DNA of 54,785 bases from Octopus bimaculoides. Lineage: Eukaryota. Below the pieces are notes generated by a model. It saw only the letters and a program-made list of their open reading frames with translations. It did no database searches and was not told the DNA's origin. The stretch spans positions 43,626,614 through 43,681,398 of the forward strand of contig NC_068987.1 of NCBI RefSeq assembly GCF_001194135.2, written 5' to 3'. The position numbers and the translations under genes were made by a program. This document shows positions 5,280 through 29,139 of the stretch, piece after piece; position 1 is the first letter of the stretch; each line of letters opens with the position of its first letter.

Positions 5280-5975
5280 CAGTAAATTTCGTAATCGCTA
5301 CCAATATAGCATAAGACTACACCTCAAAGGATCATTTATTAGATTCCTTAAGGGTCGTTATCATTGTTTCTATTTCCAAGGTTTCAAATTTGTATGTTTA
5401 AAAATGTAGAGACTCACAACNNNNNNNNNNNNNNNNNNNNNNNNNNNNNNNNNNNNNNNNNNNNNNNNNNNNNNNNNNNNNNNNNNNNNNNNNNNNNNNN
5501 NNNNNNNNNNNNNNNNNNNNACTTCTTAAAGCACGTGTATTTGTTTATGTTTCTGAAGAAGATCGTCGGTGTGTACTTACGACGTTCCACTATCGTTAGA
5601 AAAAAGCAGAGCAATTTCCTTTCTTGATGCTCCTGGTGACTCAGGTATAACATTTGTAACATTGCTTCTCTCCAAAGTAAGGCAACAAAAGAAAAAATTG
5701 CAGTTGCTGTACCACTGTCTGCCTTTGCTGCCACCATTCTCCCAGGAGGACGAGCAGCTCATTCTGCTTTTAAATTACCACTAAACCTGGTCACAAGTGA
5801 CAGTCCAATATGTAACATAAGCAAAGATTCAGGTTCAGCAGAAGTGTTGTGCCAATACCACCTTATCATTTGGGAAGAATGTACCATGTCACATAGAGGT
5901 GAAATGGAAGTTCTTGGTAACACCTTACAGGACATCAGAGGCAACAACAAATTTATGGGAGGAGTTACATTAGTT

Positions 5976-7093
5976 TGTAGTGAAACTACCTCCCGCCATT
6001 AGATACAAACTACTATCGCCATTACATACAATCTTCTCATTTAAATATAAATAAATGCGAGCGTAGTAGAGAACCCATTCCTTGTCATCACGGGACTGAT
6101 TATTATTCGAATCGGCAACTTCTTCGAACCTTTCCCGCCAGAACGCAAACTGACCAATCACAGCCCCTAATAAGGTCACGTGATAGAGTATTAAACTGAA
6201 GCCTTCGGGAGCCAATAGTTTGTTATAAATAGCTTTAACTCATACCCAACAAATTTGTCTCGGTCCAGTTTCTCTTNNNNNNNNNNNNNNNNNNNNNNNN
6301 NNNNNNNNNNNNNNNNNNNNNNNNNNNNNNNNNNNNNNNNNNNNNNNNNNNNNNNNNNNNNNNNNNNNNNNNNNNNNNNNNNNNNNNNNNNNNNNNNNNN
6401 NNNNNNNNNNNNNNNNNNNNNNNNNNNNNNNNNNNNNNNNNNNNNNNNNNNNNNNNNNNNNNNNNNNNNNNNNNNNNNNNNNNNNNNNNNNNNNNNNNNN
6501 NNNNNNNNNNNNNNNNNNNNNNNNNNNNNNNNNNNNNNNNNNNNNNNNNNNNNNNNNNNNNNNNNNNNNNNNNNNNNNNNNNNNNNNNNNNNNNNNNNNN
6601 NNNNNNNNNNNNNNNNNNNNNNNNNNNNNNNNNNNNNNNNNNNNNNNNNNNNNNNNNNNNNNNNNNNNNNNNNNNNNNNNNNNNNNNNNNNNNNNNNNNN
6701 NNNNNNNNNNNNNNNNNNNNNNNNNNNNNNNNNNNNNNNNNNNNNNNNNNNNNNNNNNNNNNNNNNNNNNCATACACACATGTATCACTCACATACACAC
6801 TTTTCTTTGTATGACGGCCTGTTTTTGATTATGTTATTATATGTCGCATTCACACTCTCACATAGACATACATCTTTAACGCTACAATAAATATCTCTGT
6901 TATTCATCTTATACGGTTGTGGTCTTTCATTACTGGTCACATATGTTATCGTCGCATAACATATCATGTATATCATCATCTTTGATATATATTTGTATGT
7001 TCGACCGTGTGACACGTTTAAATAAAAGGAGTCCTCTGTTTTTCCATTCGTCACCATTTCTCCTTTTATGAGTTCGCACGGTTGTCCCTTACA
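5976..7093 (+). mobile_element. Solo LTR (Ty3/gypsy-like), with an internal N gap
   Basis: Termini TGTAG...TTACA, 4-bp TSD AGTT (5972-5975, 7094-7097), TATA at 6224, AATAAA at 6886 and 7021. Its removal restores GGVTLVLSGDFRQ. Confidence 0.85.
6131..6231 (+). promoter_or_regulatory. Putative Pol II promoter in LTR U3 (E2F-like, CCAAT, E-box, CCAAT, TATA)
   Basis: TTTCCCGC 6131, CCAAT 6154, GTCACGTGA 6175, CCAAT 6212, TATAAAT 6224; CpG-rich. Motif presence only. Confidence 0.5.
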
Positions 7094-8252
7094 AGTTTTA
7101 TCAGGAGACTTCAGACAGACATTACCAGTCATTATGAGACAAACAAGGTCTGATAAAATTAAAGCATGCATTAAGTCTTCACACCTACGGAATAAAGTAA
7201 TGAAATTCTCCTTCAATACTAATGTGCAAGCTTCATTACATGGGGACTGATGTGCGAAACAGTTTTCAACTTGGCTCCTCCAATTAGGAAATGGGAAAGT
7301 ACCATTTGATGGGAACAATGATATCAGTTTGGCTCATATTGCTATCATGGTGAATTCCCCAGCTGAATTGAAGTACAAGGTATTTCCAGACTTACATAAT
7401 AATTATAATTCACATAAATGGTTGTGTGAAAAGGCAATTTATACTTCAAAAAATGACACAGTAGCAAGAATTAACCATGAATTAAATGAGATTCCAACAG
7501 TCATTAAGAAGTACAAATCAGTTGATTCAGTCCTTGATGAAAATCAAGTTGTCCATTAACCAACAGAGTTCATTAATTCTTTGGAGCCACCTGCAATTCC
7601 ACCACACTAACTTTTCCTGAATGTAGGAGTCCCAATAATGCTTCTAAGAAATTTAGATCCTCCTAAATTATGTGATTGGACAAGGTGAAGACATTATCAC
7701 CTAATGTGACAGAAACTACCATCATCACTGGATGTGCCTCTGGGGAAGAGGCTTTCATTGCAAGAATTAAATCAAATCAACAGACATGCCCTTTCAGTTC
7801 AAACGAACACAATTCCCAGTATGACTTCACTTTGCAATGTCTATTCATAAAGATCAAGGTCAGTCTTTGAAATCTACTGATTTGCATTTCTTATAGTCAA
7901 CTTTGTTGGTTGCTCCAGGGTAATTTGCAAGACTTATTTGTCTATGCTCCATACCAGAAAATGAAAGAGTGTTGTTTACCCAGCTCTTACGTAATTTCTT
8001 TTAACATATGTGGTAGAATTTATCTCCTTTCATAAAAGTGGTAAATTTTATGTTTTTGTTTATTATTATTATTATTATTATTATTTTGTATTATGAATTC
8101 AGAATTGATTTCCCAATTAAAGAATAAATTGTATCCCAATTGAAGAATAAATTGAATTTACAATAACAAATTTCTATACAACATATTTTGCTTTTGTCTT
8201 CCAATATGTAAGGAAAAATTTAATTCCCAGGCAATGCTGGGTGCCTCTGCTA

Positions 8253-12240: not shown

Positions 12241-12384
12241 GGGGAGTACAGGGTGACAGTTATCCCAAACCGTTGCTATGCTGTCTCTCTTCTTTCCTGT
12301 CTGTGGGGTTAATAATCTTTAGTTACAGTTTCTCATTCAAACTACATAATAGGCAGAATACACTCAGTTTATGGGTAAGAATAC

Positions 12385-13349
12385 TTGCATAAAAGAACTT
12401 GCAGAAGATGGTTTGCAAAATTCAGAAGTGGAGATTTCAGCCTTGAAGGTGAAGATCGAACAGGATGTCCAGTTGAGTTTGATGATAAGCTCCTTGAGGC
12501 ATTACTTGAAGAAAATCCTGCGTTATCAGTTGAAGAATTGGCAATAAAGCTTAGTTCAAACCATACAACTGTTCATCGTCATCTTCAACAAATTGGAAAA
12601 GTTCCTAAACTTGGAAAATGGGTTCCTCATGAATTGTCTGAAAGCAACCACAAATCCCAAGTTGATATCTGCTTTTCTCTCCATTCTCACAAACTTATTT
12701 CACCCTTTTTGAATAGACTTATGACTGGTGACAAAAAATGGATCTTCTATCGAAATGTTAAATGTCGTAAACAGTCACTTGGTAAAAGGGAAAAAACTCA
12801 ACCACAATCGAGAAGGGAACTTCATGGGAAAAAGGTTCTTCTCTCTATCTGGTGGGATTGCAAAGGAATAATTCAATTTGAATTGTTACCACCTAATGCA
12901 ACAATCAATGCTTTGAACCAAGCTTTGAAGAAAAAAAGACCCACTTAGTGAATTGAAAAGGAGTGATATTTCATCAGGACAATGCGTGACCCCACACTGC
13001 AAAGATCACATCACAGAAGATCGAAGAGCTTGGCTGGGAAAAAATTCCTCATCCACCTTATTCTTCTAACCTTGCTCCTTCAGACTACCATTTGTTTTGT
13101 AGTTTACAGAATCATTTGGAGGACATAGCTTTTGCAAGCCAGGAGGAGGTCGAAAATGACATTTCAGAGTTCTTTGCTTTGAAACCAAAAGAGTTTTACA
13201 TTGATGGGATTAAAAAGCTTGTAAATAGATGGAAGGAAGTTATAGATAATCAGGGAAAGTACATTGATGATTAAATTTCAATTAAATATAACATTTGATC
13301 ACTTGTTTTCTTTATTCAAAATTCAGACAGAACTTATGAGATGACCTCA
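12385..13349 (+). mobile_element. Mariner transposon, 5'-truncated, transposase pseudogene with 3' TIR
   Basis: RWFAKFRSGDFSLE, KLGKWVPHEL, MTGDKKW, LLSIWWDCKG, HQDNA, HPPYSSNLAPSDYHLF, with stops and frameshifts. TIR CAGACAGAACTTATGAGATGACCTCA|TA. Confidence 0.93.
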
Positions 13350-13351
13350 TA

Positions 13352-13428
13352 ATAGACAGAGAACACCACTGGAAAATACGAAAACTAAAAGAAGCAGCAC
13401 ATATGCTAGGACACAACAATCTCCTAAG
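13352..13428 (+). mobile_element. Penelope GIY-YIG C-terminal fragment
   Basis: IDREHHWKIRKLKEAAHMLGHNNLL, homologous to 27496-27570. Confidence 0.8.
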
Positions 13429-13645
13429 ATTGTTGCCAAAACTGACCTCGCCTGTGCTTGTGCCACATAAAAAGCACTCAGTCCACTCTGCTGGGTGGTT
13501 GGTGTTAGGAAGGGCATCCAGCTGTAAAAATCCTGCCAAAACAGTTACAGAAGTCTGGTGCAGGCTTCTGCCTGGCCAGCTTCTGTCAAACCGTCCCACC
13601 CATGCCAGCATGGAAGGCAGACGTTAAACAATGATAAGGATAATG
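13429..13645 (+). mobile_element. RTE LINE distal 3' UTR with ATG-like tail
   Basis: TTGGTGTTAGGAAGGGCATCCAGCTGTA...CCCATGCCAGCATGGAAGGCAGACGTTAAACAATGAT. Confidence 0.85.
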
Positions 13646-14430
13646 ATTGGGTGGGACAAAATGTTCATTTGGTGTTTTAAGTGAATATAAGACACAAATT
13701 TTAAACACAAAGCGATTTGTTCAATCAATAATATAATTACTGTCTCACTCTTGTATCTTCTGCCATCTTATGGGTAGATCCATTATTCCCTGCTCAAAGA
13801 ATTTCCTGTCATAACTGGTGAAGACCTCTTCCAGGTGAATTTTTACATCCTTTTCAAGTCAAAGGTCTGTTGTTCAATGAAGTTTTGAAGAGCCTGAAAC
13901 AGGTGGAAATTTGAAAGTGCAAGGTCAGGCATATATAGAGTGCAACAAAACTTCCCAGCCAAACTCTGTCATGTCTGCAAAGAAGGTTGCAGTCTGGCAT
14001 TGTCATGATGAAAAACAATGTCCTTACATATAGCAAGTGCAGGATACTTCTGGTGGAATGCTGCATTTAATTTGTCCTGCTGGATTGGAAGAAGCTTGTA
14101 AAAGACAACACCCTTCCATTCTCACCAAATTAAAACATAACCCTTTGAGTGAAGTCCTGTTTTGGAGGTTGTTTGTGGTGGTTTGCTGCACTTTCCCATG
14201 GTCATTTGTGCTTCACATTGTATTAGGTGATCCATTTTTCCTGTCACCACTCTCTTCAAAAAAAAAAAAGAAGAAATTTCTTTTCTCGTTTCTCCAGTAA
14301 ATCATAGATGGAAATCTGTTGGAAGAAGTTAGCCCCATTCAACTGATGTGAGACCCAAATATCAAGCCTGCTGATTTAACCAAGTTGATACAGATGGCTT
14401 TCAATATACTATTTGTATATTCGGGCAATA
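13646..14430 (-). mobile_element. Old mariner remnant
   Basis: Minus strand gives PDLALSNFHLFQALQNF and FFEQGIMDLPIRWQK; TIR-like TTGGGTGGGACAAAATGTTC near 13647. Confidence 0.65.
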
Positions 14431-14786
14431 TCTGCATTATTCTGGTCGTTTAAAGGGAGTTTTATATATGAATATACATAAATGTGTGTGTTCACCTATT
14501 GCATCAGTCTCTAACTCTCTTTCTCCCTCTATTTTATACTACTAGTTTTGTTTTTTATTCTCCCTTCCAACTATCTATAGGACTCCTGATTACTAACTGT
14601 ATATATATAAACACTTCATCCAAATGTAAATTTTGTATTTTTTTATTCCTTGCCTGAAGAATTTCTAATGGGAGATATCTTACATATTTTCTACTACATG
14701 TACAATTTTATGACTCCTACTAGCAACTGAAACATTTAATAATGATTGAAAAATACCAAAAATTTTTTTCGATCTCCTGTTTTGAT

Positions 14787-14832
<46 letters not shown>

Positions 14833-14854
14833 TTATGTTTCACTTTGAATTGTC

Positions 14855-15232
14855 AGGAAACACACCATGCATGAGGAGACCTATTGAGTCAAGTAAAATC
14901 AAATCATAATCAAATGGAAATTGTAGTTATGTTCAATGCCATTGCCACCTGACTGGCTCTCATGCTGGTGGCATGCAATAAGCACCATCCATGCATGAGT
15001 CGTTGCCAGTGCTGCCTGACTAGCTCCCTGTGCCATTGACACGTAAAAAGCATCATCTGAACGTGGTTGATGCATTCTGTAAAATGGTTGGTGTTAGGAA
15101 GGGCATCAAGCTGTAGAAACATTGCCAAATCAGATTGGAGCCTGGTGAGGCCTCCTGGCTTGCCGGTCCCCAGTCAAACTGTCCAACCCATGTCAGCATG
15201 GAAAAATTAATGCTAAACGATGATGATGATGA
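14855..15232 (+). mobile_element. Old RTE 3' end with (GAT)n tail
   Basis: Homologous to the reverse complement of 638-1140; ends GCTAAACGATGATGATGATG. Confidence 0.8.
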
Positions 15233-15685
15233 ACAGAAAAAATGATACATATCTATATGTACGCATAAAAAAATATGCACAGATAGGCATATTGGGCACA
15301 CATATATGCAGACAAGTACATGCATACTTCTCATTTATACATCTATATGCACATACATGCATGTATTCATAGACACACATGGAAACATAGCCAGACATAC
15401 AAATACAGTATCTTATGCCCACAAATACACTTATGCACATACATACACACACACACATACATATATACACATACATAAAAATACACACCATCTATACATA
15501 CATATACACTCATACACAAATATATACATACATGTACATTCATAGGGTATATGTTGAAGTATGAGAGGATAAGGGTAAGTAAACAGAAATGCCTAAATTT
15601 TAGGAGAATGGGGCTACGAAAATCAAACTCTACTTTGAATTTCTTCTGTATTTTTATATTTTTTGACTGTGATCGTTTCTATATA

Positions 15686-15890
15686 TAAGGGGGTGCTGAA
15701 AAGTTCCTGGCTTTAAGGGTATCGTGAAAGGCCTGGTTGGAGGCCCAACCTTCTGAGTTCTCTTAGAGGGCTTGGAAAAAACTGAAGTACCACTGCAGTA
15801 AGTGTGTGATTTTGTGTGTGAATAAAATCAATTAACTGATCCTCCCATATTTTTTTTACCCAAAGCCAGGAACTGTTTAGCACCCCCTTT
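15686..15890. mobile_element. Tc1/mariner-type MITE
   Basis: ~28-bp TIRs AGGGGGTGCTGAAAAGTTCCTGGCTTT / AAAGCCAGGAACTGTTTAGCACCCCCT with TA on both sides (15684-85, 15891-92). Confidence 0.88.
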
Positions 15891-16699
15891 TATACACGTG
15901 TTTTTAAATTGCATTATTAATGTATACTATTATTAATATTAGTAATATATATTCTGCTGAGATTAACTTTGCCTTTCATTCTTTTGGGAGTCATCAATAA
16001 AATAAGTATCAGTCAAGTACTGGAGTTTGATATTATCAAGTAACCCACTCAGTTAAAAATTGTTGGCCTTGCATAAAAATTTGAACCCATTAGTATGTAT
16101 TCGCTTTTATTTACCTCCATCAAATCCTGTAATAACTACAAGATAGTTATAAATTCCTTTTAGAGAACTATACAATCTGCTATGCAATATATGAAACAAC
16201 CAAAACAACTAACACTATTCAAATGTTATGTCAACACTAACAGATGACCAAACATCAATTTTTGGGGGTTAAGATCTTTTGTTGGTTGAGAATTTTGCTG
16301 TTGCTGTTGTTCGTTTTTTTGTAATAATCTATTTTCCTTGGATCAGTTTTGCTTAAATATGTTTTGTTTTGTACCAAAGGTCAAGGATGTTTTGATCACT
16401 GTTGTAGTTGACAAGATTATTATGTCTGTCTGTCCGTCCATCCATCCATCCATCCATATATATGTGCCTCCACCCATGTTCAACATTCACTACATTCATT
16501 TCTATCCTCATTTTAATCCAACTGCCACTCTCCTTTCAGACTTACCTGCCCACTCACCCAAATTTAGAATTTGGAGATGGTTTTTTCTGATCCTCTTTGA
16601 GGGTTTTGACATTTTCTTTCTCACCTTCTCCTTTTATCTTGTTGATTTATCTCAAGTTTTAATGGTTCATTTTCTATAAGGTATGAATTTGTTTTTATA

Positions 16700-16862
16700 G
16701 GTGCAGGTGTTGTTGTGTAGTTTAGAAGCTTGCTTCCTATCCATATAGTCTCTGGTTTAGTCCCACTGTGCAGCAGCTTGGGAAAGTGTCTTCTACTATA
16801 GCTCCAGACTGACCATAGCCTTGTGAATAGATTTGGTAGAGGAAACTGAAAGTTAACCTCCT
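16700..16862 (+). mobile_element. tRNA-derived CORE-like SINE
   Basis: GTTGTGTAGTTTAGAAGCTTGCTTCC head, TTGGGAAAGTGTCTTCTACTATAGC core, GATTTGGTAGAGGAAACTGAAAG end. Confidence 0.75.
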
Positions 16863-17639
16863 TATATATGTATGTGTATATATATGTGTATATGTATTTG
16901 CCATTTTTGAAGGCAATAATATAACTCAGTTTTATTATTGATGGTTGCTGCAACATGCTGTAGTGCATGTAGTTTCTCTTGGATGTAGTGCTGGTATTTA
17001 CAGGTTCCGAGTATGTAAGGAAGGGCTCTTTCAAGTGTGCCTCATGTAATGTTGAGACAGAGATAATACAGGACCGAGGTAGAGTTTTCCCTGACACTGA
17101 ATTTGAAAGAGAGTAAATGTTTCATAATTCTCCCTTTGAAGTCATTGACTCTTAAGTTCATACAATTTTTTGGGATACCATCAAGTAGTGTGAGGGTTGC
17201 TTTGTAGGCCATAGCATTTGAGATGTAAAAATCCTCCCTAGCAGATCATTGATGGGACCATCTCATTTGAGAAAACTCTTCTCTCTGAGCATGACATGGT
17301 ACTCTGCAATCTTACTTTCCATCATAACAAAACTAAAACCAACTACATTCATTGTAGAGCAGAGCACCCAATTGATATCATGAATTTGCACAAAGCAGAC
17401 TAGGGAGAAATTAGATATGATCTATTGCTTATCAAGTAATGAAGCAGTTTGCAGAAGTTTGAGGATATAATCATCAGCACATGTTCAAATCACACCCTAA
17501 CAAAACTCAAGCACAAGTTGAGATAGTATAAAGGCTTATGTAAGTTCAAACAGCTTCTCTACTACTGGTTTGTTGTGCTATTACCTGCTTTCAAATTATT
17601 TGTAGACCAATCCGCACAGGAGAGGCTTTGGTTTTTCCT

Positions 17640-18975
17640 CATTGTAAATAGATATGGGCTCCTGAAAGAGAAAAAAAGCTGCTGGAAAAAGAGCTCCTGA
17701 AAGAGAAAAAAGGAGCAGTAATCTCCTAAATTTGAATCAAACATAAATGTTGTATATCTTGACTTCAACAAGGCCTTCGACAGAGCTGACCACAACTTTT
17801 ACTGCTTAAACTGTTCAACAGTAGAGTGTACAGAAAACTCCTGCACTAGACTAAGTAGTTCCTGGTTAACAGAACCCTACACCTTTGTTTGATGGAGTCC
17901 ATTCATGCCCAACAAAAGTCAGCAGTGGTACCCTCCAAGGGTCTGTGTTGTATCCATCCCTTTTCATATATAAACAACATCTGTATAAAGAACATATATA
18001 TATATAAACAACATTGCAAATACCATCAAACACTGTAAAATAAAAATAGTCACAGATGACTCTGAGCTTCAGAAATTTATTTATGGAGAAGATGTCTGAA
18101 TAAAGACTACAGTCCAATCTACAGGATGCAGCAGGAAAAACCTCCCATATTTTACCTGGTGATTGGTGTGTTGCTAGTAAAGATAGCTAGGTGGTAACAG
18201 TGTCTTCATGTAGCTAATGTTTTGCCATTTTTTTTCTTTCTGTTACCATCATAGTTTAGATTGGTGCACACCATGCATTTGCTATTAAAATGTTTATCAA
18301 GAATGGTGGATGAGAGGGATTTTGCTTCACCCTCTTCTTGCTGTCAGTAAATGAACAGAAAAAAAAACAATATGTTCTAAATGAGGGAAACTTTGAACTT
18401 CTGCATTTTTGGAAAAAAGAAGTGCTTAAACAGCGATAACCTTTCTTTTCATGAAAATCATTAATGGTAACTAGCAATCCCAGAGGCCTAGGAGTAATGA
18501 TCGACAGCAACCTCAGTTGGAATGCCCACAAGGTTGACATTGTAAGCTCCTAGATCCTCAAAACTTTCCAGTCTCTTCATTTGTAGGTCATACTTTTACT
18601 CCCTGTGGTATCCACTTAATAAACAAAGCATCACGAGAATTGAGGCACTCCAGACAAGGCCTTAATTATTGGGATCACCTCAAAACACTCATTCCCTCTA
18701 ATGCTACTGAGTTCCACATTATTTTTGCATAATATGGGAAATATACTAAAAGCGTTGCCCAAAAGATTTTCATGGGAAGTTTAAAAACCAGATAAGGTTG
18801 GGACCATATACCATACACCTCATGACACAAATTATGCTCACAACACATGATATTATGACACAGTTATTTTGACTTGGCTGACTTTCCTTCATTTAACATT
18901 GTCAAAAAAGAAATACCTCAATACCCCCAACAGTACCTGGACACCATAATACACAATTTAAAGCAGTGGCACATG
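17640..18975 (+). mobile_element. Degenerate CR1/Jockey-group LINE RT remnant
   Basis: VVYLDFNKAFDRADH, SGTLQGSVLYPSLF, LGVMIDSNLSWNAH; multiple stops and frameshifts. Confidence 0.8.
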
Positions 18976-19254
18976 TTAAAATAATTAGTAATATATTAAT
19001 ATATTTAAATATAATAATGATGTTAATGATGACTTCAATGATGATGATAATAATAATCATATTAATAATATCAACAATCCCTAAAAAACATTATTAGAGA
19101 AAATTTCTAGAATATAGAGTGAACTTATGATGTCATACATGAATGATTAAGGAATGGGAAGGGAGATTAGTCACCTTAGTTCAACAGTATTCTATTTTTA
19201 GCTTCAATTCATGAGTTATCAACAAGAGCCAGCATTGTTTATCAGTAGGTATCT

Positions 19255-19645
19255 ACTAACCAGACTAAGTAGCTAATTTGTAGCCAGAGTAGGTAGCCAG
19301 TTACTTGCCAAACAAATTAGTCAGATAGTAATCAACTATTGTGGCCAGACTTGTTAGTTTGTAGCCAGACTAGTTAGCCAGCTACTAGCCAGACAAGTTT
19401 AGCCAGCTTCTAGTCAGACAAGTCAGCCAGCTTGTTGCAAGATAAAGTAGCCAGTTACTAGTCAGAAAAGGTAGCTACTCATGAGACATGTAGCCAGACA
19501 AGTTAACCAGCTACTAGCCAAACTAGGTAGTCAGTTTGTATCCAGACAAGTTAGCCTGCGACTAGCCAGACCAAATATATTAACCAGTTTGTAGATAAAT
19601 TACTTAGCTAGACTAGTAGCCAGGTAAGCTACCCAGCTAGTAACC
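19255..19645. repeat. Degenerate minisatellite (~24-bp unit TAGCCAGACAAGT-TAGCCAGCTAC)
   Basis: TAGCCAG recurs every 11-13 nt. Confidence 0.85.
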
Positions 19646-19829
19646 ACATGGTTGGAAAACCATCTGGTTTTTCCAATAATAGGAAGGTGGTGGGGTGATC
19701 TTCACAATGGTCTTGGCTGATGGCCAGATCTCTTCTATACATGACAACTGTTTTCAACAAAGCACTGCAAGTCAGTCATTCTAGGATACTGAATGAATGC
19801 TTGCAATATGTTAACCAGCAATGACTTCT

Positions 19830-20250
19830 GTGCTCAGTAAGCATCTGGACAGGTGAGTAGCTACCTGAATGGTATCAAATTATGTCCCTTTGTGTTCTGA
19901 GTTCAATTCCTACTGAGGTTACCTTTGTCTTTCATCCTTCTGTGGGTCAGTGGGAGTGAGGAATTAACAGAATTAAGTACCAGCCAGGTACTGAAGCCAT
20001 TGGAATCAGTTGTTCCCTCCTGTACTAACATAAAAAATCATTATTCATGTTGTAGCAGAATTATTAACACATTGAGCAAAACACCTTTTAGTGTTTGCTT
20101 TTATTTCAAAACCCACCCAAGTCAACTTTGTCTTCTCTCTTTTGTGGATCAATAAAATATGGTATCAATATCAAATACTGAGATTGTTATAATCAACTAA
20201 TCCCTCCCATCAGACTTGTTGACTTCGTGCCTAAACTAGAAACAACAACA

Positions 20251-20296
<46 letters not shown>
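19830..20296 (+). mobile_element. Two degenerate Deu/Nin-like SINE pieces ending in an (ATT)n tract (20251-20296)
   Basis: GAGTTCAATTCC B-box and CTTTGTCTTTCATCCTT core; 3' end CTTCGTGCCTAAACTAGAAAC + (ATT)n. Confidence 0.55.
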
Positions 20297-20297
<1 letters not shown>

Positions 20298-20920
20298 AGG
20301 TTTTGTTGAAACTCCTGGAGTTTTGCATGCATAGCGGTCTTGCTACCTGCAGCCTGCAGTACCATGTTATTTGTTCTTTTCAGCTATCTAATACTTTCCT
20401 GATTATTTTGGCTGTGCCAAGGAGGCAACCCTTTTGTAACAGTTCTGCTGGGCACTCTATTTCAATTTCCTTAATATTCCTCTTGATGCCTTCTGATACT
20501 GTCCCCAAGGACTCAACAATAATTGGCACTATCTTCACCTTCTTCATTTTCCATAGCCAGGCTATTTTGTACTGAAGAGGGTTGTATTTATCTATTTTTT
20601 CGCCTTCCTTCTTGACTATTTGTGGGTCAAAGGGGCATGCAACATCAACTATATAGCACATGTAGTGCATCTTGTCAACCACCACTAAGTCCAGTCTGTT
20701 ATGCTCTAGCACCTGATTTGTTTGGATGGGGAAATTCCAGAGGATTTTGCTAGTCTCTGACTCTACCACTCTCTGCGGTATGTGCTCATACCATGTCTTG
20801 CCTCTCTCTAGCATCCATTTTTCGCACAGTTTCCAATGTAGCAATTCCGCTACCTAATTGTGTCGCCTCAACTTGTAGTGGTTTTGGGAAAGTCTAGGGC
20901 ATTCATTTGTGATATGGACA
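20297..20920 (-). mobile_element. Dong/R4-clade LINE, copy 1 (restriction-like endonuclease end)
   Basis: RHN-VAELLHW, NRLDLVVVDK, IVDVACPFD, EKIDKY, VPIIVESLG, LLGTAKIIRKVL: the RLE domain of R4-clade elements. Confidence 0.88.
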
Positions 20921-20935
20921 ATTATTATTATTATT

Positions 20936-21740
20936 GTTCAACATTTGGTACTTAAAGGCAAATTTCTACTGCATCACCTGCTACACCACCATGTTGCTGT
21001 GGTATGTGCAGCATTATGTCCTCTTTTTCATTGAGAGTGCAAATTCTTCTTGGTATTGTATTACATCAGTTTGTTTTGATCACTCTTTTGTTATATTAGT
21101 GCTTGTGTTGTGTGTGTAATGTGAGTTGTGTTGTTCTGTTGGGTATCTAGCCTGCTGGTGGTTGTTTATTTTATTGGATATTTACTATGTAGAGTGTGTT
21201 TATGGATTGTTTTGCTTGGGTTTTATCATTGAATTGATAATGTCTTGTGTAGGATGTGGGCTGTCCCTAGCAGGGCTAATTTTTGGATAGTGTGTAATGT
21301 TGAGGGTCCAGGTATAGCTTCTATGTTTTTGTCCACATGGTTTTTTATCATGCCCAATGCTCCAATTATTACTGGTATTATTTTCCCCTTCATGTCCCAA
21401 TCATGAATACTTCAATTTTGAGGTCTTTGTACTTTGACAGTTTCTTCACTTCTTTTTGGGCAATATTTTGGTCAGATGGGACTGCAATATCTATCAGTAA
21501 GCAGGGTTTTTTTTTCCAGTCCTTGATTATTATGTTTGGGAATTAGCTTTATTTCTTTGTCAGTTTGAACAGGCACATCCAAGATAATTGTCCCTGGTCA
21601 TTGTCATATACCTTGTTTGGCACATGTTTATACCATTTCTCGTCAGTTTTTATGTTGTAATGTTGGCATATTGTCCATGCTGGCATGATTTACTTGGTCA
21701 TGTCTGTATATATGTATATATATATATATATGTATATATG

Positions 21741-21771
<31 letters not shown>

Positions 21772-23560
21772 GTATATATGTATATATATATATATGTATA
21801 TATGTATATATATATATATATGTATATATGTATATATATATATATATGTATATATGTATATATATATATATATGTATATATGTATATATATATNNNNNNN
21901 NNNNNNNNNNNNNNNNNNNNNNNNNNNNNNNNNNNNNNNNNNNNNNNNNNNNNNNNNNNNNNNNNNNNNNNNNNNNNNNNNNNNNNNNNNNNNNNNNNNN
22001 NNNNNNNNNNNNNNNNNNNNNNNNNNNNNNNNNNNNNNNNNNNNNNNNNNNNNNNNNNNNNNNNNNNNNNNNNNNNNNNNNNNNNNNNNNNNNNNNNNNN
22101 NNNNNNNNNNNNNNNNNNNNNNNNNNNNNNNNNNNNNNNNNNNNNNNNNNNNNNNNNNNNNNNNNNNNNNNNNNNNNNNNNNNNNNNNNNNNNNNNNNNN
22201 NNNNNNNNNNNNNNNNNNNNNNNNNNNNNNNNNNNNNNNNNNNNNNNNNNNNNNNNNNNNNNNNNNNNNNNNNNNNNNNNNNNNNNNNNNNNNNNNNNNN
22301 NNNNNNNNNNNNNNNNNNNNNNNNNNNNNNNNNNNNNNNNNNNNNNNNNNNNNNNNNNNNNNNNNNNNNNNNNNNNNNNNNNNNNNNNNNNNNNNNNNNN
22401 NNNNNNNNNNNNNNNNNNNNNNNNNNNNNNNNNNNNNNNNNNNNNNNNNNNNNNNNNNNNNNNNNNNNNNNNNNNNNNNNNNNNNNNNNNNNNNNNNNNN
22501 NNNNNNNNNNNNNNNNNNNNNNNNNNNNNNNNNNNNNNNNNNNNNNNNNNNNNNNNNNNNNNNNNNNNNNNNNNNNNNNNNNNNNNNNNNNNNNNNNNNN
22601 NNNNNNNNNNNNNNNNNNNNNNNNNNNNNNNNNNNNNNNNNNNNNNNNNNNNNNNNNNNNNNNNNNNNNNNNNNNNNNNNNNNNNNNNNNNNNNNNNNNN
22701 NNNNNNNNNNNNNNNNNNNNNNNNNNNNNNNNNNNNNNNNNNNNNNNNNNNNNNNNNNNNNNNNNNNNNNNNNNNNNNNNNNNNNNNNNNNNNNNNNNNN
22801 NNNNNNNNNNNNNNNNNNNNNNNNNNNNNNNNNNNNNNNNNNNNNNNTATTTTGCTTTTGTAGTTGTTTGCAGTCAGGCATTGGTCTTTTGCAGCGAGAA
22901 TCAGTCCTTTCATTTCAGTTTTTAGTCCATAACTTTTGAGCCATTGTTGACTTTTACTTAGGCTCACTTCTTCTCTGTCAAGCTTTGCAGGGTATTGGCC
23001 ATCAAGTGATTTTTCTCTTCATTTCTTGTTTGTATATTTTGTAGTTCTGTTTTCATGTTGTCTTTTGTGACTGATCATTTCTGCTGTGTTGTCATCTAAG
23101 ATCAGTGTAGTTCATTTCTGTTTTGTATTTTGTCACCTTCTTGTGTACAAAGAAAAGCATTTTTTTTTTTTTTGTTGCTTTATTACATGTAGTAGTCTTC
23201 CACCTTTTGTTTCTAAGTACTTTTCTAGTCTAACTGTTGTTATTTTATTGTAGTTGTCTGTGTCAAGCTGTAACCTCCTTCTAAGTGAGGTAGATATACT
23301 CTCTGTGTCTACTTTGGGGTGGTGACTTTGGTATGCTGTAAACAGTGTCACTTTGACACATTTGTCCAGTCTCATGCCCGTTCCAATGTCCTTGCTGAAA
23401 CTATGGACAATTTTTAGGGTTCTCTGTTCCATGGTATTTTTTGTGAAAATTCTAGAATCATCTATGTATAGGAGATGGTTTATCGTTTGTCCATAGCATC
23501 TGTAACCCATAATGGTTTCATTTAACAAGTTGTTAGTGGGGTCAGAGCAAGGCAGAAAAG
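20936..23560 (-). mobile_element. Dong/R4-clade LINE, copy 2 (old; RT to RLE), interrupted by (TA)n(TG) microsatellite and gap
   Basis: INHLLYIDD (RT), QWLKSYGLKTEMKGLILAAKDQCL, KPDIIIKDW, and a LGTAHILHK-like C-terminus. Confidence 0.75.
21894..22846. other. Assembly gap (largest of many N runs; others at 907, 5421, 6277, 11135, 23930, 26777, 31743, 43385, 50935, 51725)
   Basis: Runs of N, mostly next to microsatellites or young repeats. They create spurious long ORFs and may hide exons. Confidence 0.99.
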
Positions 23561-23591
23561 CTGAGGTGACAGTTAGTCTCCTTGGAAAATC

Positions 23592-23643
<52 letters not shown>

Positions 23644-23646
<3 letters not shown>

Positions 23647-24453
23647 TAGTTTTATTTTTATAGCGTGCTTTCACTTCACTACCGAGCGCAGCTCTGTGTG
23701 CCTTGGGTATGTGCTGTGGTTTGCTGTGATACTTTTATGGTTACTGTATTGAAAGTGTTTTGCGTAGGATGTGTGCAGTGCCCAGTAGTGCAATTTTCTG
23801 TATGTTATATATACTTGTAAGTCCTGGTGTTTTTGTTATGTATTTGTCAGAATATCTTTTTATCATACCTAATGTGCCTACTATGATAGGAATTGTTTCT
23901 GTTTTTAGATTCCACATTCGAGTTACCTCNNNNNNNNNNNNNNNNNNNNNNNNNNNNNNNNNNNNNNNNNNNNNNNNNNNNNNNNNNNNNNNNNNNNNNN
24001 NNNNNNNNNNNNNNNNNNNNNNNNNNNNNNNNNNNNNNNNNNNNNNNNNNNNNNNNNNNNNNNNNNNNNNNNNNNNNNNNNNNNNNNNNNNNNNNNNNNN
24101 NNNNNNNNNNNNNNNNNNNNNNNNNNNNNNNNNNNNNNNNNNNNNNNNNNNNNNNNNNNNNNNNNNNNNNNNNNNNNNNNNNNNNNNNNNNNNNNNNNNN
24201 NNNNNNNNNNNNNNNNNNNNNNNNNNNNNGTTGGCATAGCTTCCAGTGTATGTAGGTCCCAGCTCTGTCGTGTCTGTGAATATATTCCTTCTTAGCCAGG
24301 ACTGGGCAACCAGAGATAATATGATTTATTGTTTCTTGTCCATCGCCACATATTCTGCAGTTACTTATTATGTTTCTTTTCATTATATGTTTTTGGTAAT
24401 TTCTGGTGGGGGGCTTTGGTCTTGTGCTGCAATTAAGAATCCTTCAGTCTCTG

Positions 24454-24454
<1 letters not shown>
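23644..24454 (-). mobile_element. Dong/R4-clade LINE, copy 3 (young; CCHC knuckle to 3' UTR)
   Basis: ETEGFLIAAQDQS, CRICGDGQETINHIISGC (CCHC), HRHD, ALLGTAHILRKTL; (AAT)n tail. Confidence 0.92.
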
Positions 24455-24494
<40 letters not shown>

Positions 24495-26217
24495 GGTGGT
24501 GATGTTGGAGAAATGGTAGGGTGTCAGACTACACATTTGGCTAACTTACTTTGTTTGAGTTCAAATCTGGTCAGATCATCACTCTAGCTTTGTTGCAGTA
24601 TGCTTCAGTAACACAATGGCGCATGTTCAATCAACTGTACTCATAATCCTCATAATCCACGAAAAAATTTGTGTCTGTGCCAAGAAGGTAATTTATCATT
24701 ATTGCACCTGTTTTATTAACTGTTCTCATGAGCCACTGACTAAACCTTTGCATGATTTACTGACCTGCTGCTGGAAATAGCAATAGCATTGGGCAGTGTA
24801 ATCCTTGGGAAATATCATCTCTAAAAAAAAGACATGATGGTCACAGCTGTGATGCCTTTGATCATAAGTCTGTTTGACCAGTACTGGCCTGAGATTAAAC
24901 AGCAATAATAATAGTTCTTATGAAATCATTGTACAACTGAAATATCCAAGATGTAGATAATGTAAATAATTCCTCATCTCTTAAATATAGAACTGTATTA
25001 TCTAATCAATATGAAGCCGACATTAGACTTCAATGAATAGATATAGAGAAACTCCATCAAAAACTAACTCGTCTTTCAAACCATCTAACTTTCCTGTGTA
25101 GATGTAGAGACTCAGAGCTAATACCACCTGGCTTGAATATAATGACACCAGTGGATTCATATAAAGCTTGAAAAGTAACAGAAAGGGCAGGACATGCTCT
25201 TGACCATGAGAGGATCCATTACAACCATTGGAAAAAAACATCAACTAAATTACGAAATCAGAGAGAGGTTATCTTCATTACTTAGAAAAATAACCAGAGA
25301 TGATGATAGAAAGAGAATCCAACAAGATCTAGAAAAGTCATACTTGAAAGAATCTGAAAAGGTGAAGACATGCCAAATTAAGAAGTTTATGAAACTCAAA
25401 GGTCAGAGAATGAAGACTGAAGTCCATCACCCACCTGTGAAAGCAGTACTAAACAAAGGTCTCAACTTTGCAACAACCATCAAGTGCATTCCATACTTGG
25501 ACATAATAGCCCCTATTGAAGAGATAGCCATAAAGATATCAAAAGCTCAGGGAGATGAACTAAGGTGGAAAGTGAGACAGGTACTAGAAAAAGCGAAACT
25601 TCCCAAACCAAACATCACTAAGGAAGAAAAGTTCACTATCAAAAGACTACAGAGTGACAATTCCATCATAATACTTCCAGCAGACAAGGGAAATGCTACA
25701 GTAGTGATGAACAAGTCTGACTACTAGGAAAAATTGGCAAAGTAAAGAAAGACTCAACTCTTAAAACAGAGAAGAAGTTGTCACAGATCTTGATTAAGAA
25801 CAAGGATCACTTTACACCAATGAAGTACAGAGAACTGACTCAACACTACAGTAAACTACCACATATGTACGGTCTTCCCAAGATTCACAATGATGGTATT
25901 CCATTAAGACCTATAGTGGAGCTGTAGAGGTTCAGCATGTCATCCACTGAGCCGCTTCCTTGTGGATATAATCAGTTCATTAGCAGCAAAGTCAACATTG
26001 TACGAGAAGAATTCCACCCACCTCACAGAATTGATCAAGGATACTCCTACTGAATCCAACCAGATAGTGAGTCTAGATGTGATAAGTCCCAACTGGTGAA
26101 GCACTATTGGTGATTCAAGAAAAACTAGTGACAGACACCTGTCTAAAAGAATGCACTAGTATACCAATAAGAAACTTGATGGAAATGTTGAGCTTCTGTG
26201 TAGAAACTACCTACTAC

Positions 26218-26440
26218 AAAGGCGGCGAGCTGGCAGAAACATTAGCGCGCCAGGTGAAATGCTCAGCGGTATTTCGTTTGCCGTTACGTTCTGAGTTCAA
26301 ATTCCACCGAGGTCGACTTTGCCTTTCATCCTTTCAGGGTCGATAAATTAAGTACCAGTTACGCACTGAGGTCGATGTAGTCAACTTAATCCCTTTGTCT
26401 GTCCTTGTTTGTCCCCTCTATGTTGGACAATAAAGAAATA
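26218..26440 (+). mobile_element. Young tRNA-derived Deu/Nin-like SINE inserted in the Penelope RT
   Basis: A and B boxes, GGTCGACTTTGCCTTTCATCCTTTC core, 12-bp TSD AAACTACCTACT / AAACTATCTACT. Removal restores FCVETTYFSMD. Confidence 0.9.
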
Positions 26441-27176
26441 AAAAACTATCTACTTCAGTATGGACACTGATATATATCGACAAGAAGAGGGTTTAGCTAT
26501 GGGTTCATCATTATTACCAATAATAGCCAATATATACATGGAATACTTTGAGAATTTGGCTTTAGGATAAACACCACTAAAACCAACCCTATGGCTGCGA
26601 TATGTTGGTGACACCTTTATACTCTGGCCCCACCAGGAAGATGTCCAAATGCTGTTAGATCATGTGAACTCAATAAAGCCATCCATATAGTTCACAATGG
26701 AAAAGGAAAAAGACAATCAGCTAGCATTCCTGGACGTATTAATAACACACACCAAATATGGATTCAGGGCATCCATNNNNNNNNNNNNNNNNNNNNNNNN
26801 NNNNNNNNNNNNNNNNNNNNNNNNNNNNNNNNNNNNNNNNNNNNNNNNNNNNNNNNNNNNNNNNNNNNNNNNNNNNNNNNNNNNNNNNNNNNNNNNNNNN
26901 NNNNNNNNNNNNNNNNNNNNNNNNNNNNNNNNNNNNNNNNNNNNNNNNNNNNNNNNNNNNNNNNNNNNNNNNNNNNNNNNNNNNNNNNNNNNNNNNNNNN
27001 NNNNNNNNNNNNNNNNNNNNNNNNNNNNNNNNNNNNNNNNNNNNNNNNNNNNNNNNNNNNNNNNNNNNNNNNNNNNNNNNNNNNNNNNNNNNNNNNNNNN
27101 NNNNNNNNNNNNNNNNNNNNNNNNNNNNNNNNNNNNNNNNNNNNNNNNNNNNNNNNNNNNNNNNNNNNNNNNNNNN

Positions 27177-27493
27177 GTTGGGAAAAAGTTCTTCATCCAC
27201 CTTATTCTCCTGACCTTGCTCCTCCAGACTACAATTTGTTTTGTAGTTTACAAAATCATTTGGAGGACATAACTTTCACAAGCCAGGAGGAGATCGAAAC
27301 TGATATTACAGAGTTCTTCACTTTAAAACCAAGAGAGTTTTACATTGATGTGATTAAAAAGCTTGTAAATAGATGGAAGGAAGTCATAGATAATCAGGGA
27401 AAGTACATTGATGATAAAATTTCAATTAAATGTAACATTTGATCACTTGTTTTCTTTATTCAAAATTCAGACAGAACTTATGGGATGACCTGG
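27177..27493 (+). mobile_element. Mariner 3' end nested in the Penelope endonuclease
   Basis: HPPYSPDLAPPDYNLF...RWKEVIDNQGKYID and a TIR ending ATGACCTGG|TA. Roughly 90% identical by eye to 13030-13349. Confidence 0.92.
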
Positions 27494-27671
27494 TAATAGA
27501 CAGAGAACACCACTTGAAAATAGAAAAACTAAAAGCAGCACATATGCTAGGACAAAACAACCTCCTAAGCAGACCGAGTGCAGATATGAATAGTATATGG
27601 GAACCGGTATTAAGGAAGGATAGAATAATATTAGATTTATAAGCCCTAAATTTCACTCCATAATTGCCCAC

Positions 27672-27780
27672 AGGCATATGGCGTAGTGGTTAAGAGCGTG
27701 AGCTACTAACCCTAAGATTCCAAGTTTGATTCCAGGCAGTGACCTGAATAATAATAACTAATAATAATAATAATAATAAT
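27672..27780 (+). mobile_element. Short tRNA-head SINE with (AAT)n tail
   Basis: TGGCGTAGTGGTTAAG A box and GTTTGATTCC B box, followed directly by (AAT)n; no cloverleaf 3' acceptor arm. Confidence 0.7.
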
Positions 27781-29139
27781 ATTGAAAAATATCTTAGGAA
27801 TGAGAACCCAGGTTCAAAATTTCCCCAAGTCACCTGATGACGGCTGGAAACAAGATGAGGACAAATATCCATCAAATGTAAATAATGTGATAGAGGATTT
27901 GTCTACAAGCTCACAAGTTTTCAGTTTAAATCCACTGGAGGTATTTTGTCATGTATTTGGATAGTTAATTTTTATGTGAACCATTCTAAGCTGTTGACAA
28001 TAATAGTGCTCCAATATGGCAACAGCTCACAGGCTCCAATATGGTAACAGCTCACAGGCTGAAACAGGTAAAAGAGCATAAGAATAAATGTGATTAGGAG
28101 CCAGATTGATTTTTACTGGGAATTTAACCTGCAACACATCCTGCCAGTAGCTTGACTCACTTCCCATTGATGATATGAAAGCAAATAGATATTTTATATT
28201 CAATGCACCCAGTATTCCACCCCCCTACCTTCTCTTCATTCTGGAGTGGTGTATTTTTTTGGTTCATTGATTTTTAAATATTTGGGAAGTCTGTCATGGT
28301 CTGTTTCTCATATCTTTTGCCTGGCTTTCAATCTTGGAGCATGATATTCGTAATCAGTGTGTTAGGTGTCACTCCTAAATTTCCCTCCAGAAAGTTGTGA
28401 CATCCATTATGTTAGAGACCTTTACTTTCACTGGAAGCCAGAACTGGTCAAGTGATGGATGAAATGCCTTGCATAACCTACATAGTTATGTTTCTTTATG
28501 TTCTGAATTCACATCTTTGCAGGTAGTAGGAGGAGGTTGATAAAATATGTATTGGTTAGTTCAGGAGGAGGGATTCAATACAATATACACTGGTCGGTCA
28601 TGTATTGAGGTTAATCTAATCAATCGTACCCTTCTCCAAAAATTCTTTGTCTTGTGTTTGTGCTGGAAAATATTGCTACATTGGAAGGTATAGAAATGAT
28701 AGAATTTAGAACTAAATGCTTTATGCATCTTCCTATTCTGAGTTTGCTTTCTGCCTAGGTTCGATTTTCTCCTTTCTTTACTACTAATCTGAGTGTTTTC
28801 AGAAAGTTTCTAGAATATACATATTCTTATTGTAGCATTCAACAGAAATGTGAGCAAGCTAGTGAGCATTTGATAGTCAGCTTAATGTCTATGTGCAAAT
28901 AGGATTCATGCCATTTATTCAGGTTTAATTATTATACAAGGCTTTGTAACATGTTAAAATGGTTCACTGATTTTAAGGAAGCAACACCTACTAATTTTCT
29001 TTAAATTTTCATTTATCCTTTTGATGGATACCTGCATTTAGTTTCTTCTGCTAGTAGTCATATGCTTGGCTCAAAGCTTAGGTGTGAGTTAATGTCATAA
29101 ACAAATGATTACCATGACTGATTCAAGAACCAAACTTAA

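What the first reader, a model, noticed from the sequence alone, without database searches (positions are those of the whole stretch)
13030..27642. Identical mariner-into-Penelope junction occurs twice: candidate hitch-hiking composite element
Seen: two mariner 3' ends (13030-13349 and 27177-27493, roughly 10% diverged by eye) both end in the same TIR, then TA, then the same Penelope GIY-YIG C-terminal coding sequence (ATAGACAGAGAACACCAC..., IDREHH.K..KLK.AAHMLG.NNLL). At 25-27.9 kb the mariner sits inside an almost complete Penelope. At 12.4-13.4 kb the unit is 5'-truncated within the transposase. Known: mariner inserts at nearly any TA, so two independent hits at one TA are unlikely, and PLE copies are often 5'-truncated. 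Inference: a DNA transposon became cargo of a retroelement, and the chimera was copied as a unit through RNA.
Basis: partly seen in the sequence, partly recalled or inferred. Interest (0 to 1): 0.75.

Follow-up and report, generated by a model that had tools for sequence, protein, structure and literature searches.

The report
Mariner-in-Penelope junction, duplicated once locally
A mariner DNA transposon landed inside the endonuclease domain of a Penelope-like retroelement, and that exact junction occurs twice, 14 kb apart; nothing I could test shows that the pair spread as an RNA-copied hitch-hiker rather than being copied once locally, so it is ordinary nested-transposon debris for now.

Summary
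Windows 13035-13428 and 27179-27569 are 91.6% identical. Both run from a mariner 3' inverted repeat through a TA into the same codon of a Penelope-like element (PLE) GIY-YIG domain. Uninterrupted PLE relatives read ...WDEVKI|IDREHH..., so a mariner insertion at that TA is confirmed.

The retro-mobilisation reading is not established.
- Copy A (12358-13428) is broken at both ends. It lacks the first 271 nt of the mariner. It keeps only 79 nt of PLE and then abuts a 5'-truncated SINE. The PLE 3' end never resumes, so the expected common 3' end is missing.
- Copy B's left edge is an assembly gap. That gap would need about 1.5 kb, not 400 N, if both elements were complete.
- A and B relate to the mariner consensus in a star-like way, with 3 shared changes, all at CpG sites.
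- No other flank homology, target-site duplication, pseudo-LTR or hammerhead ribozyme was found.
- Limited public protein and contig data gave uninterrupted PLE ends and mariner ends in other contexts, but no further junction.

Best reading: one nested insertion, copied once locally. Interest is low.

The parts
12358..13349 (+). Copy A: mariner (DD34D family), 5'-truncated and degenerate. It corresponds to nucleotides 272-1291 of the full-length relative L002. The 3' inverted repeat ends at 13349.
   Evidence: Local alignment to L002, 95.4% identity over aligned blocks. Pfam Transposase_1 and HTH_48. tblastn with P0002.
13350..13428 (+). Copy A: TA target dinucleotide (13350-13351) plus 77 nt of PLE GIY-YIG C-terminal coding sequence (IDREHHWKIRKLKEAAHMLGHNNLL). 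PLE homology stops at 13428.
   Evidence: 95% identical to the uninterrupted PLE L001 338-417. tblastn with P0001, P0122 and P0133. No PLE continuation downstream.
13429..13647 (+). 5'-truncated octopus SINE with a degenerate (GAT)n tail, joined directly to the PLE fragment. The joint reads CTCCTAAG|ATTGTTGCC. The SINE consensus reads GAGCGAG|ATCGTTGCC, giving AG microhomology. It is followed at 13647 by the inverted-repeat-like end of another Tc1/mariner remnant on the minus strand.
   Evidence: blastn and alignment to other SINE copies in the window, which extend at least 100 nt further 5'. Inverted-repeat-like motif. tblastn 13861-14405, minus strand.
24956..26776 (+). Copy B: PLE N-terminal region and reverse transcriptase (ILPADKGN motif; YVGDTF for YVDDTF), with stop codons. 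It is interrupted by a SINE at 26219 to about 26437 that has a roughly 14-nt target-site duplication.
   Evidence: tblastn with full-length PLE protein P0124, residues 47-605. Pfam RVT_1, weak. Sequence.
26777..27176 (.). Assembly gap (400 N, estimated length). It would have to hold PLE residues 606-795 (about 570 nt) and mariner nucleotides 1 to about 974 if both were complete.
27177..27493 (+). Copy B: last 317 nt of the same mariner family (93.7% identical to L002 975-1293). The 3' inverted repeat ends at 27493.
   Evidence: blastn, alignment.
27494..27642 (+). Copy B: TA (27494-27495) plus the PLE GIY-YIG C-terminus through to its stop codon (IDREHHLKIEKLKAAHMLGQNNLLSRPSADMNSIWEPVLRKDRIILDL*).
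   Evidence: tblastn with P0001, 77% over 56 aa. Translation.
27643..27791 (+). Copy B: PLE 3' untranslated region (to about 27745, conserved with L001) followed by an (AAT)n run at 27747-27791.
   Evidence: blastn B vs L001 339-583, 83.7%. Sequence.

Best explanation
A DD34D mariner inserted once into the TA between two Ile codons (AAAATA|ATAGAC) of the C-terminal GIY-YIG endonuclease domain of a canonical Penelope-like element. This disrupted the endonuclease. Copy B is most likely that nested insertion, or a near-complete descendant of it.

Soon after the insertion, while the mariner was still consensus-like, a piece of about 1.07 kb spanning the mariner 3' part and the junction was copied once to a site 14.1 kb upstream in the same orientation. 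That piece is copy A.

Copy A is a fragment broken at both ends. Its left break is at mariner nucleotide 272. Its right break is 79 nt into the PLE, at a 2-nt microhomology with a 5'-truncated SINE. I take the copying step to be a local DNA-level event, such as a short local duplication, repair-templated filler or ectopic conversion, followed by the usual erosion. I do not take it to be the spread of a self-propagating 'hitch-hiker' family.

Shown: both junctions, their common site, both truncations of A, and the lack of any other shared flank. Inferred: a single origin, and the DNA-level nature of the copying step.
For: - Same TA, orientation and sequence at both junctions. The insertion site is confirmed by the uninterrupted PLE copies P0001/L001 and P0242.
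- A aligns to the full-length mariner L002 only from nucleotide 272 onward.
- A's PLE part ends at 13428 against a 5'-truncated SINE, and PLE never resumes.
- No target-site duplication flanks 12358-13647. By contrast, a SINE inside copy B still shows a roughly 14-nt duplication.
- The copies are 14,144 nt apart and in direct orientation.
- Sampled mariner ends in public contigs are not in PLE: L002, L003, L004, L006.
- Sampled ends of this PLE family are uninterrupted.
- None of the 46 fetched cephalopod-type PLE proteins reads into a mariner repeat.
- The 68-aa junction-spanning peptide finds no junction-bearing protein among 5.8 billion clusters or 1.84 billion representatives.
Against: - Apart from the 394-nt block there is no collinear homology between the neighbourhoods of A and B. 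A classical large segmental duplication is therefore not shown either.
- The left side of B is a gap, so the true extent of the shared block is unknown.
- A and B are star-like relative to the mariner consensus: 15 and 21 differences from L002, with only 3 shared, all at CpG sites. The copy was therefore made very soon after the insertion. This is at least as natural for copying from an active, transcribed PLE as for a random DNA duplication.
- PLE copies are typically 5'-truncated and can be mobilised in trans (PMC8557442).
- The public data I could query hold very little octopus DNA, so the absence of further junctions is weak evidence.
Confidence: 0.5

Rival explanations
1. The PLE::mariner chimera was transcribed and retro-copied by PLE reverse transcriptase supplied in trans. 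Copy A is a 5'-truncated retrocopy, possibly the upstream member of a PLE partial tandem, that later lost its PLE 3' end.
For: - Same junction with equal divergence in both parts.
- A is 5'-truncated.
- The truncated copy lies upstream of the fuller copy in the same orientation, as in PLE partial tandems (PMC8557442).
- The star-like relation implies copying soon after the insertion.
- Non-autonomous PLE derivatives that share only the 3' end are known (PMC8557442).
Against: - A lacks the PLE 3' end that every PLE retrocopy must start from.
- No tail or target-site duplication.
- No pseudo-LTR remnant upstream of B's 5' end in the readable sequence, and no hammerhead ribozyme.
- 11.5 kb of unrelated sequence separates A from B.
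- Two dispersed copies 14 kb apart would be very unlikely unless the family had thousands of members. Yet the Logan contig of the mariner ends at TA+T rather than running into PLE, and no other junction was found.
Confidence: 0.2
2. Chimeric retrocopy by template switching. A LINE reverse transcriptase copying the SINE RNA jumped, at an AG microhomology, onto a PLE::mariner read-through transcript. It continued into the mariner and stopped at nucleotide 272. This would make 12358-13647 in one event.
For: - Direct fusion of the PLE fragment to a 5'-truncated SINE in the same orientation, with 2-nt microhomology and a SINE tail at the 3' end.
- The 5' truncation of the upstream component.
- Such bipartite chimeras are documented for LINEs (PMC2104539, PMC13174262).
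Against: - No target-site duplication around 12358-13647; 54% of shuffles do at least as well as any 6-mer.
- A's SINE is only 72-78% identical to the other copies in the window, so it may be older than the mariner fragment.
- The same joint could arise by end-joining.
Confidence: 0.1
3. Two independent mariner insertions at the same TA of two PLE copies (a target hot spot), with no copying of the junction at all.
For: The star-like relation of A and B to the mariner consensus. The only shared derived sites are 3 CpG transitions.
Against: - About 240 TA sites in two orientations per PLE.
- Other sampled insertions of the family have unrelated flanks, so no strong site preference is evident.
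- It would need two PLE copies and two hits within 14 kb.
- The PLE parts are no more diverged than the mariner parts.
Confidence: 0.08
4. Helitron capture or another DNA-level capture. Copy A is a fragment picked up by the Helitron-like element whose PIF1-type helicase lies 4.3 kb upstream on the same strand.
For: - PIF1-like helicase remnant at 5640-5999, continuing to about 8000 on the plus strand.
- A is a both-ends-truncated fragment, as captured pieces are.
Against: - No hairpin plus CTRR-T terminus between 8 and 17 kb.
- SINEs, microsatellites and a gap lie between the helicase and A.
- The boundaries of the Helitron are unknown.
Confidence: 0.05
5. Assembly artefact. One of the two junctions is a mis-join in a gap-rich short-read scaffold.
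For: There are eleven gaps in the window, and B's mariner starts exactly at a gap edge.
Against: - The two copies differ at 8% of positions, so neither is a copy of the other's reads.
- A's junctions lie inside a 9.9-kb gap-free contig.
- The PLE/SINE joint shares only 2 nt, too little for a graph mis-join.
Confidence: 0.03

Closest known systems
Nested transposon insertions, with their junction later duplicated by a local or segmental DNA event (ordinary in repeat-rich genomes such as Octopus, about 66% repeats; PMC13282606)
   Same: A DNA transposon sits inside a retroelement at a TA. The junction is present in two degenerate copies close together, and both are riddled with later SINE insertions.
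   Different: No flanking homology beyond the elements is visible. The duplicated piece is short (at least 394 nt, at most about 1.07 kb plus whatever the gap hides).
Non-autonomous Penelope-like derivatives mobilised in trans (for example MRC1 of Chlamydomonas; PMC8557442)
   Same: A PLE with a destroyed endonuclease ORF but intact ends could in principle be copied by a helper. 5' truncation is typical of such copies.
   Different: Those families are defined by many copies sharing the PLE 3' end and pseudo-LTRs. Here there are two copies, and one of them lacks the 3' end.
LINE-mediated chimeric retrocopies made by template switching (U6-L1 type; PMC2104539, PMC13174262)
   Same: Two unrelated transcripts fused head-to-tail, with the 3' partner being the retroelement (here a SINE) and the 5' partner truncated.
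   Different: No flanking target-site duplication. The relative age of the SINE is uncertain.
Mos1/Hsmar1-type mariner transposons
   Same: Transposase homologous to Mos1 (E=2e-88), DD34D spacing, roughly 30-nt inverted repeats, TA duplication, element of about 1.29 kb.
   Different: Both window copies are defective. A is 5'-truncated with frameshifts and stops. Only 317 nt of B are readable.

Membership tests
mariner (Tc1/mariner superfamily, DD34D) | Transposase homologous to Mos1/Hsmar1, with an HTH domain and a DDE-type catalytic domain | tested here: met
   Copy A: Pfam Transposase_1 E=3e-15 and HTH_48. The intact relative P0002 (84% identical to A) matches the Mos1 transposase 3hos_A at E=2e-88 and Pfam HTH_48 and Transposase_1.
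mariner (Tc1/mariner superfamily, DD34D) | Catalytic triad with 34 residues between the second and third Asp | tested here: met
   P0002 has D153 (DEKW), D245 (HQDNA) and D280 (PSDYHLF), a spacing of 34. The script measured to D275 (spacing 29); I corrected this by hand to the PSD aspartate. In copy A the motifs GDKKW, HQDNA and APSDYHLF are readable, but the ORF has stops and frameshifts.
mariner (Tc1/mariner superfamily, DD34D) | Short terminal inverted repeats and a TA target-site duplication | tested here: met
   L002 starts ATA|TCAGGTCATCCCATAAGTTCTGTCCGA and ends TCGGACAGAACTTATGGGATGACCTGA|TAT. Its ends match each other in inverse orientation. In the window only the 3' repeat plus TA is present in each copy.
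Penelope-like element (canonical, C-terminal endonuclease) | PLE-type reverse transcriptase with the N-terminal DKG motif | tested here: met
   24956-26774 aligns to PLE proteins P0124, P0122 and P0127 (46-76% identity per segment). ILPADKGN and YVGDTF(ILW) are readable. Pfam RVT_1 is only weak in the decayed copy. It reaches E=6e-11 in P0124.
Penelope-like element (canonical, C-terminal endonuclease) | C-terminal GIY-YIG endonuclease with Cys/His residues inside the core | tested here: met
   Relatives carry IYSIPCSCGKVYKGETCRPLKVRLEEHRKA...ADHIW...IIDRE.HW..R.LKE. The window keeps only the last 25 aa (A) or 49 aa (B) of the domain. The local Pfam copy gave no GIY-YIG hit for P0001 or P0124, so the assignment rests on motifs and on precomputed PF01541 and source names for relatives.
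Penelope-like element (canonical, C-terminal endonuclease) | Pseudo-LTR or partial tandem, and a hammerhead ribozyme motif | tested here: not met
   No match of the PLE 3' end upstream of B's 5' end. No hammerhead or other Rfam hit in 24230-28600 or in L001. Gaps at 23930-24229 and 26777-27176 could hide them.
   Copy A stops 79 nt into the PLE, and the remaining 220 nt or so, plus the tail, are nowhere else in the window.
No octopus genome is searchable by DNA. The indirect searches found no further junction.
Segmental or tandem DNA duplication | Collinear homology extending into non-transposon flanks | tested here: not met
   Only the 394-nt block is shared between 6-21.9 kb and 21.9-42 kb. 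B's left flank is a gap, so the test is incomplete.
LINE-mediated template-switch chimera | Target-site duplication flanking the whole bipartite insert | tested here: not met
   No direct repeat of 6 nt or more between 12318-12362 and 13630-13700.

The most novel reading that the evidence does not exclude
The PLE::mariner chimera is a trans-mobilised, non-autonomous Penelope-like family. A class II transposon would then be carried as cargo and multiplied through an RNA intermediate by PLE reverse transcriptase, with copies A and B being two of many descendants.
Probability: 0.15. Interest if true: 0.5.

Novelty: new member of a known kind. Interest (0 to 1): 0.2.

Why it matters
If the chimera had really multiplied through RNA, it would give a clean natural marker for trans-mobilisation by Penelope-like elements, whose integration mechanism is still poorly known. 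It would also be an example of a DNA transposon multiplying by a copy-and-paste route. As it stands, it is a nested insertion whose junction was copied once. It is useful mainly as a caution: a shared nested junction in two nearby copies does not by itself show retro-mobilisation. It is also a well-defined probe (two junction 60-mers) for a quick genome-wide check.

Tried and rejected
2. Junction pattern and mariner-end pattern against JGI metagenome contigs: 0 hits each. These collections probably hold no octopus DNA, so this is uninformative.
3. Junction-spanning 68-aa peptide against 5.8 billion protein clusters: only an uninterrupted PLE end was found. The same peptide against 1.84 billion representatives gave 81 PLE C-termini, none with the mariner-derived prefix. 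Alignments begin at query residue 13-14 only because the mariner repeat, read in the PLE frame (NLWDDLV), mimics the PLE sequence PLWDEVKI.
4. I looked for PLE proteins that read through into the mariner 5' repeat (expected ...WDEVKISGHPISS). None occurred among the 46 closest cephalopod-type PLE proteins.
5. PLE continuation after A's SINE: none above shuffled controls.
6. Target-site duplication around 12358-13647: none.
7. Pseudo-LTR remnant upstream of B: none.
8. tRNA or hammerhead motifs in the PLE 3' region: none by ARAGORN or Rfam. My by-eye 'tRNA-like' impression is therefore unsupported.
9. Helitron 3' terminus downstream of the helicase remnant: none found with a simple hairpin plus CTRR-T scan.
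10. Shared-derived-variant test for common ancestry of A and B: only 3 shared sites, all CpG, so inconclusive.
11. The literature searches found no report of a mariner carried by a PLE.

Full report
**What is there.** I read both places and aligned them. Windows 13035-13428 and 27179-27569 form a 394-column block at 91.6% identity (E=7e-161). It is the only long similarity between the two halves of the region. The block runs from the C-terminal third of a mariner transposase gene, through the 3' untranslated part and the terminal inverted repeat, across a TA, into sequence that translates as IDREHH(W/L)KI(R/E)KLK(E)AAHMLG(H/Q)NNLL.

**The mariner.** The transposase of copy A hits Pfam Transposase_1 and HTH_48. 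A protein search returned an intact 342-aa relative, P0002 (84% identical). Its Logan contig L002 (1294 nt) is a complete element bounded by TA and by inverted repeats (TCAGGTCATCCCATAAGTTCTGTCCGA... and ...TCGGACAGAACTTATGGGATGACCTGA). P0002 matches the Mos1 transposase structure at E=2e-88 and has the D,D34D spacing (corrected by hand to the PSD aspartate). Copy A aligns to L002 from nucleotide 272 to the end, which is window 12358-13351, at 95.4% identity. It therefore lacks the 5' repeat, the leader and the first 28 codons. The element ends at 13349 in A and 27493 in B, and each is followed by TA. The repeat pattern occurs nowhere else in the window.

**The Penelope part.** A search with the 68-aa open frame that spans junction B found one protein, P0001...GIADHVWKNGDHLPLWDEVKIIDREHHWKIRKLKEAAHMLGHNNLLSRPSADMNSIWEPVL.... 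Its contig L001 reads GAAGTTAAAATAATAGACAGAGAAC without interruption. A second uninterrupted relative, P0242, came from the representative search.
- A search with the decayed reverse-transcriptase region plus P0001 returned many cephalopod-type PLE proteins. These carry ILPADKGN, YVDDTF and a C-terminal IYSIPCSCGKVYKGETCRPLKVRLEEH... GIY-YIG core with internal cysteines. That is the canonical C-terminal-endonuclease PLE architecture described in PMC8557442.
- The sequence after both junctions is therefore the last part of the PLE endonuclease domain. The mariner sits at the TA between two Ile codons.
- Mapping the full-length PLE protein P0124 onto the window gives residues 47-605 at 24956-26774 and residues 796-844 at 27481-27621, on the same strand and in the correct order.

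**The gaps.** The gap 26777-27176 lies exactly between the PLE reverse transcriptase and B's mariner fragment. If both elements were complete it would have to hold about 570 nt of PLE and about 970 nt of mariner, roughly 1.5 kb against the 400 N written. Either the gap is underestimated or something is deleted. Continuity is plausible but unproven. Reading frames are moot because the copy already carries stops. The gaps at 21894-22847 and 23930-24229 do not touch the junctions, but they limit the search for hidden PLE pieces between A and B.

**Anatomy of copy A.** The PLE homology stops at 13428, 79 nt after the mariner end including the TA.
- From 13429 the sequence is a common octopus SINE with a (GAT)n tail ending at about 13647. 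Other copies in the window extend at least 100 nt further 5', so this one is 5'-truncated.
- The joint reads CTCCTAAG|ATTGTTGCC, with AG shared by both partners.
- After the SINE tail the PLE does not resume. Local alignments to B's and L001's 3' parts score below shuffled controls. No other PLE C-terminal match exists in the window.
- Instead, a different Tc1/mariner remnant on the minus strand begins there.
- No direct repeat flanks 12358-13647. A SINE inside copy B's reverse transcriptase still shows a roughly 14-nt target duplication, so duplications of that age remain detectable here.
- Upstream of 12358 the sequence is unrelated to mariner, PLE or anything else fetched.

**One origin or two?** A PLE offers about 83 TA per kb. 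Two independent hits at the same TA in the same orientation therefore have odds of roughly 1 in 480, even given two insertions into this family. Other sampled insertions of the mariner family have unrelated flanks. The PLE parts of A and B differ by 5 mismatches and one 3-nt indel in 77 nt, similar to the 8.1% in the mariner part. A single insertion followed by copying is therefore the best reading.

The polarised comparison is nevertheless star-like. A differs from L002 at 15 sites and B at 21 sites. Only 3 derived states are shared, and all are CpG transitions. So the copy was made while the mariner was still consensus-like, and independent insertion is not formally excluded.

**How was it copied?**
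Copy A fails that test. It would need a later SINE-associated deletion to rescue it.
- *No PLE-specific hallmark supports it.* There is no pseudo-LTR upstream of B, no hammerhead ribozyme and no tail.
- *Proximity argues for a local event.* The copies are 14.1 kb apart and in direct orientation. For N dispersed copies in a genome of about 2.7 Gb, the chance of a neighbour within 14 kb is about N x 1e-5.
- *A very large family is not indicated.* The Logan mariner contig ends at TA+T rather than continuing into PLE. Two sampled ends of this PLE family are uninterrupted. None of the 46 related PLE proteins reads into a mariner repeat. No junction-bearing open frame exists in the protein collections.
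- *A classical segmental duplication is not shown either.* No other collinear homology exists between the two neighbourhoods.
- *A template-switch chimera* (SINE reverse transcription jumping onto a PLE::mariner transcript; compare PMC2104539 and PMC13174262) would explain both ends of A in one step. It lacks a target-site duplication.
- *Helitron capture.* A Helitron-type helicase remnant lies 4.3 kb upstream of A on the same strand, but I found no Helitron terminus beyond A.

**Verdict.** A single nested insertion whose junction was copied once is well supported. The mechanism of that one copy is unresolved. I favour a local DNA-level event (0.5) over PLE-mediated retro-copying (0.2), a template-switch chimera (0.1), independent hits (0.08), Helitron capture (0.05) or an artefact (0.03).

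None of the DNA collections on offer holds octopus genomes. Octopus genomes are about two-thirds repeats, with abundant PLE and Tc1/mariner families (PMC13282606). Nested junctions of this kind are therefore expected, and the finding ranks low unless the genome-wide count proves otherwise.

Noticed in passing
window 5640-5999 and about 6800-8020 (+): Remnant of a PIF1-like, Helitron-type helicase (Pfam PIF1 E=8e-19), split by gaps and frameshifts. It lies 4.3 kb upstream of copy A on the same strand. No hairpin plus CTRR-T terminus was found between 8 and 17 kb.
   Followed up: partly
window 636-833 / 1038-1323 vs 51465-51663 / 52009-52294: Direct repeat about 98% identical, 50.8 kb apart and SINE-containing. 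Each copy is interrupted by an assembly gap at the same relative place. It is either a young local duplication or assembly redundancy.
   Followed up: no
window 26219-26437 (+): A tRNA-type SINE inserted in the reverse-transcriptase region of PLE copy B, with a roughly 14-nt target-site duplication (AACTACCTACTAC / AACTATCTACTTC).
   Followed up: partly
window 27643-27745; L001 491-590: The PLE 3' untranslated region is conserved between copy B and the uninterrupted relative L001, and it looks tRNA-like by eye (…TAGTGGTTAAGAGCG…GTTTGATTCC…). ARAGORN and Rfam give no hit, so the resemblance is unsupported.
   Followed up: yes
window 3598-3921 (-): An open frame with a GIY-YIG-like core containing cysteines (LIYCIECPNCEELCIGET). 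It is probably the endonuclease of a second, different PLE-type element. It has no Pfam hit.
   Followed up: no
window 13647-14405 (-) and 49998-50591 (-): Two further Tc1/mariner remnants of other families (35% and 52% identical to P0002). The first has an Hsmar1-like repeat start (TTGGGTGGGACAAAATG) that abuts the SINE tail next to copy A.
   Followed up: partly
L007 8409-9758 (-) and 10001-11350 (+): A head-to-head inverted pair of identical 449-aa PLE open frames in an ENA contig (ctg107594l). This is the inverted-copy arrangement typical of PLE insertions.
   Followed up: no
window 27478-27495 and 13334-13351: The mariner terminal repeat read in the PLE frame gives NLWDDL(V/I). This mimics the PLE residues PLWDEVKI that it displaced, so protein alignments to PLE run about 6 residues into the mariner and can blur the junction.
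   Followed up: yes
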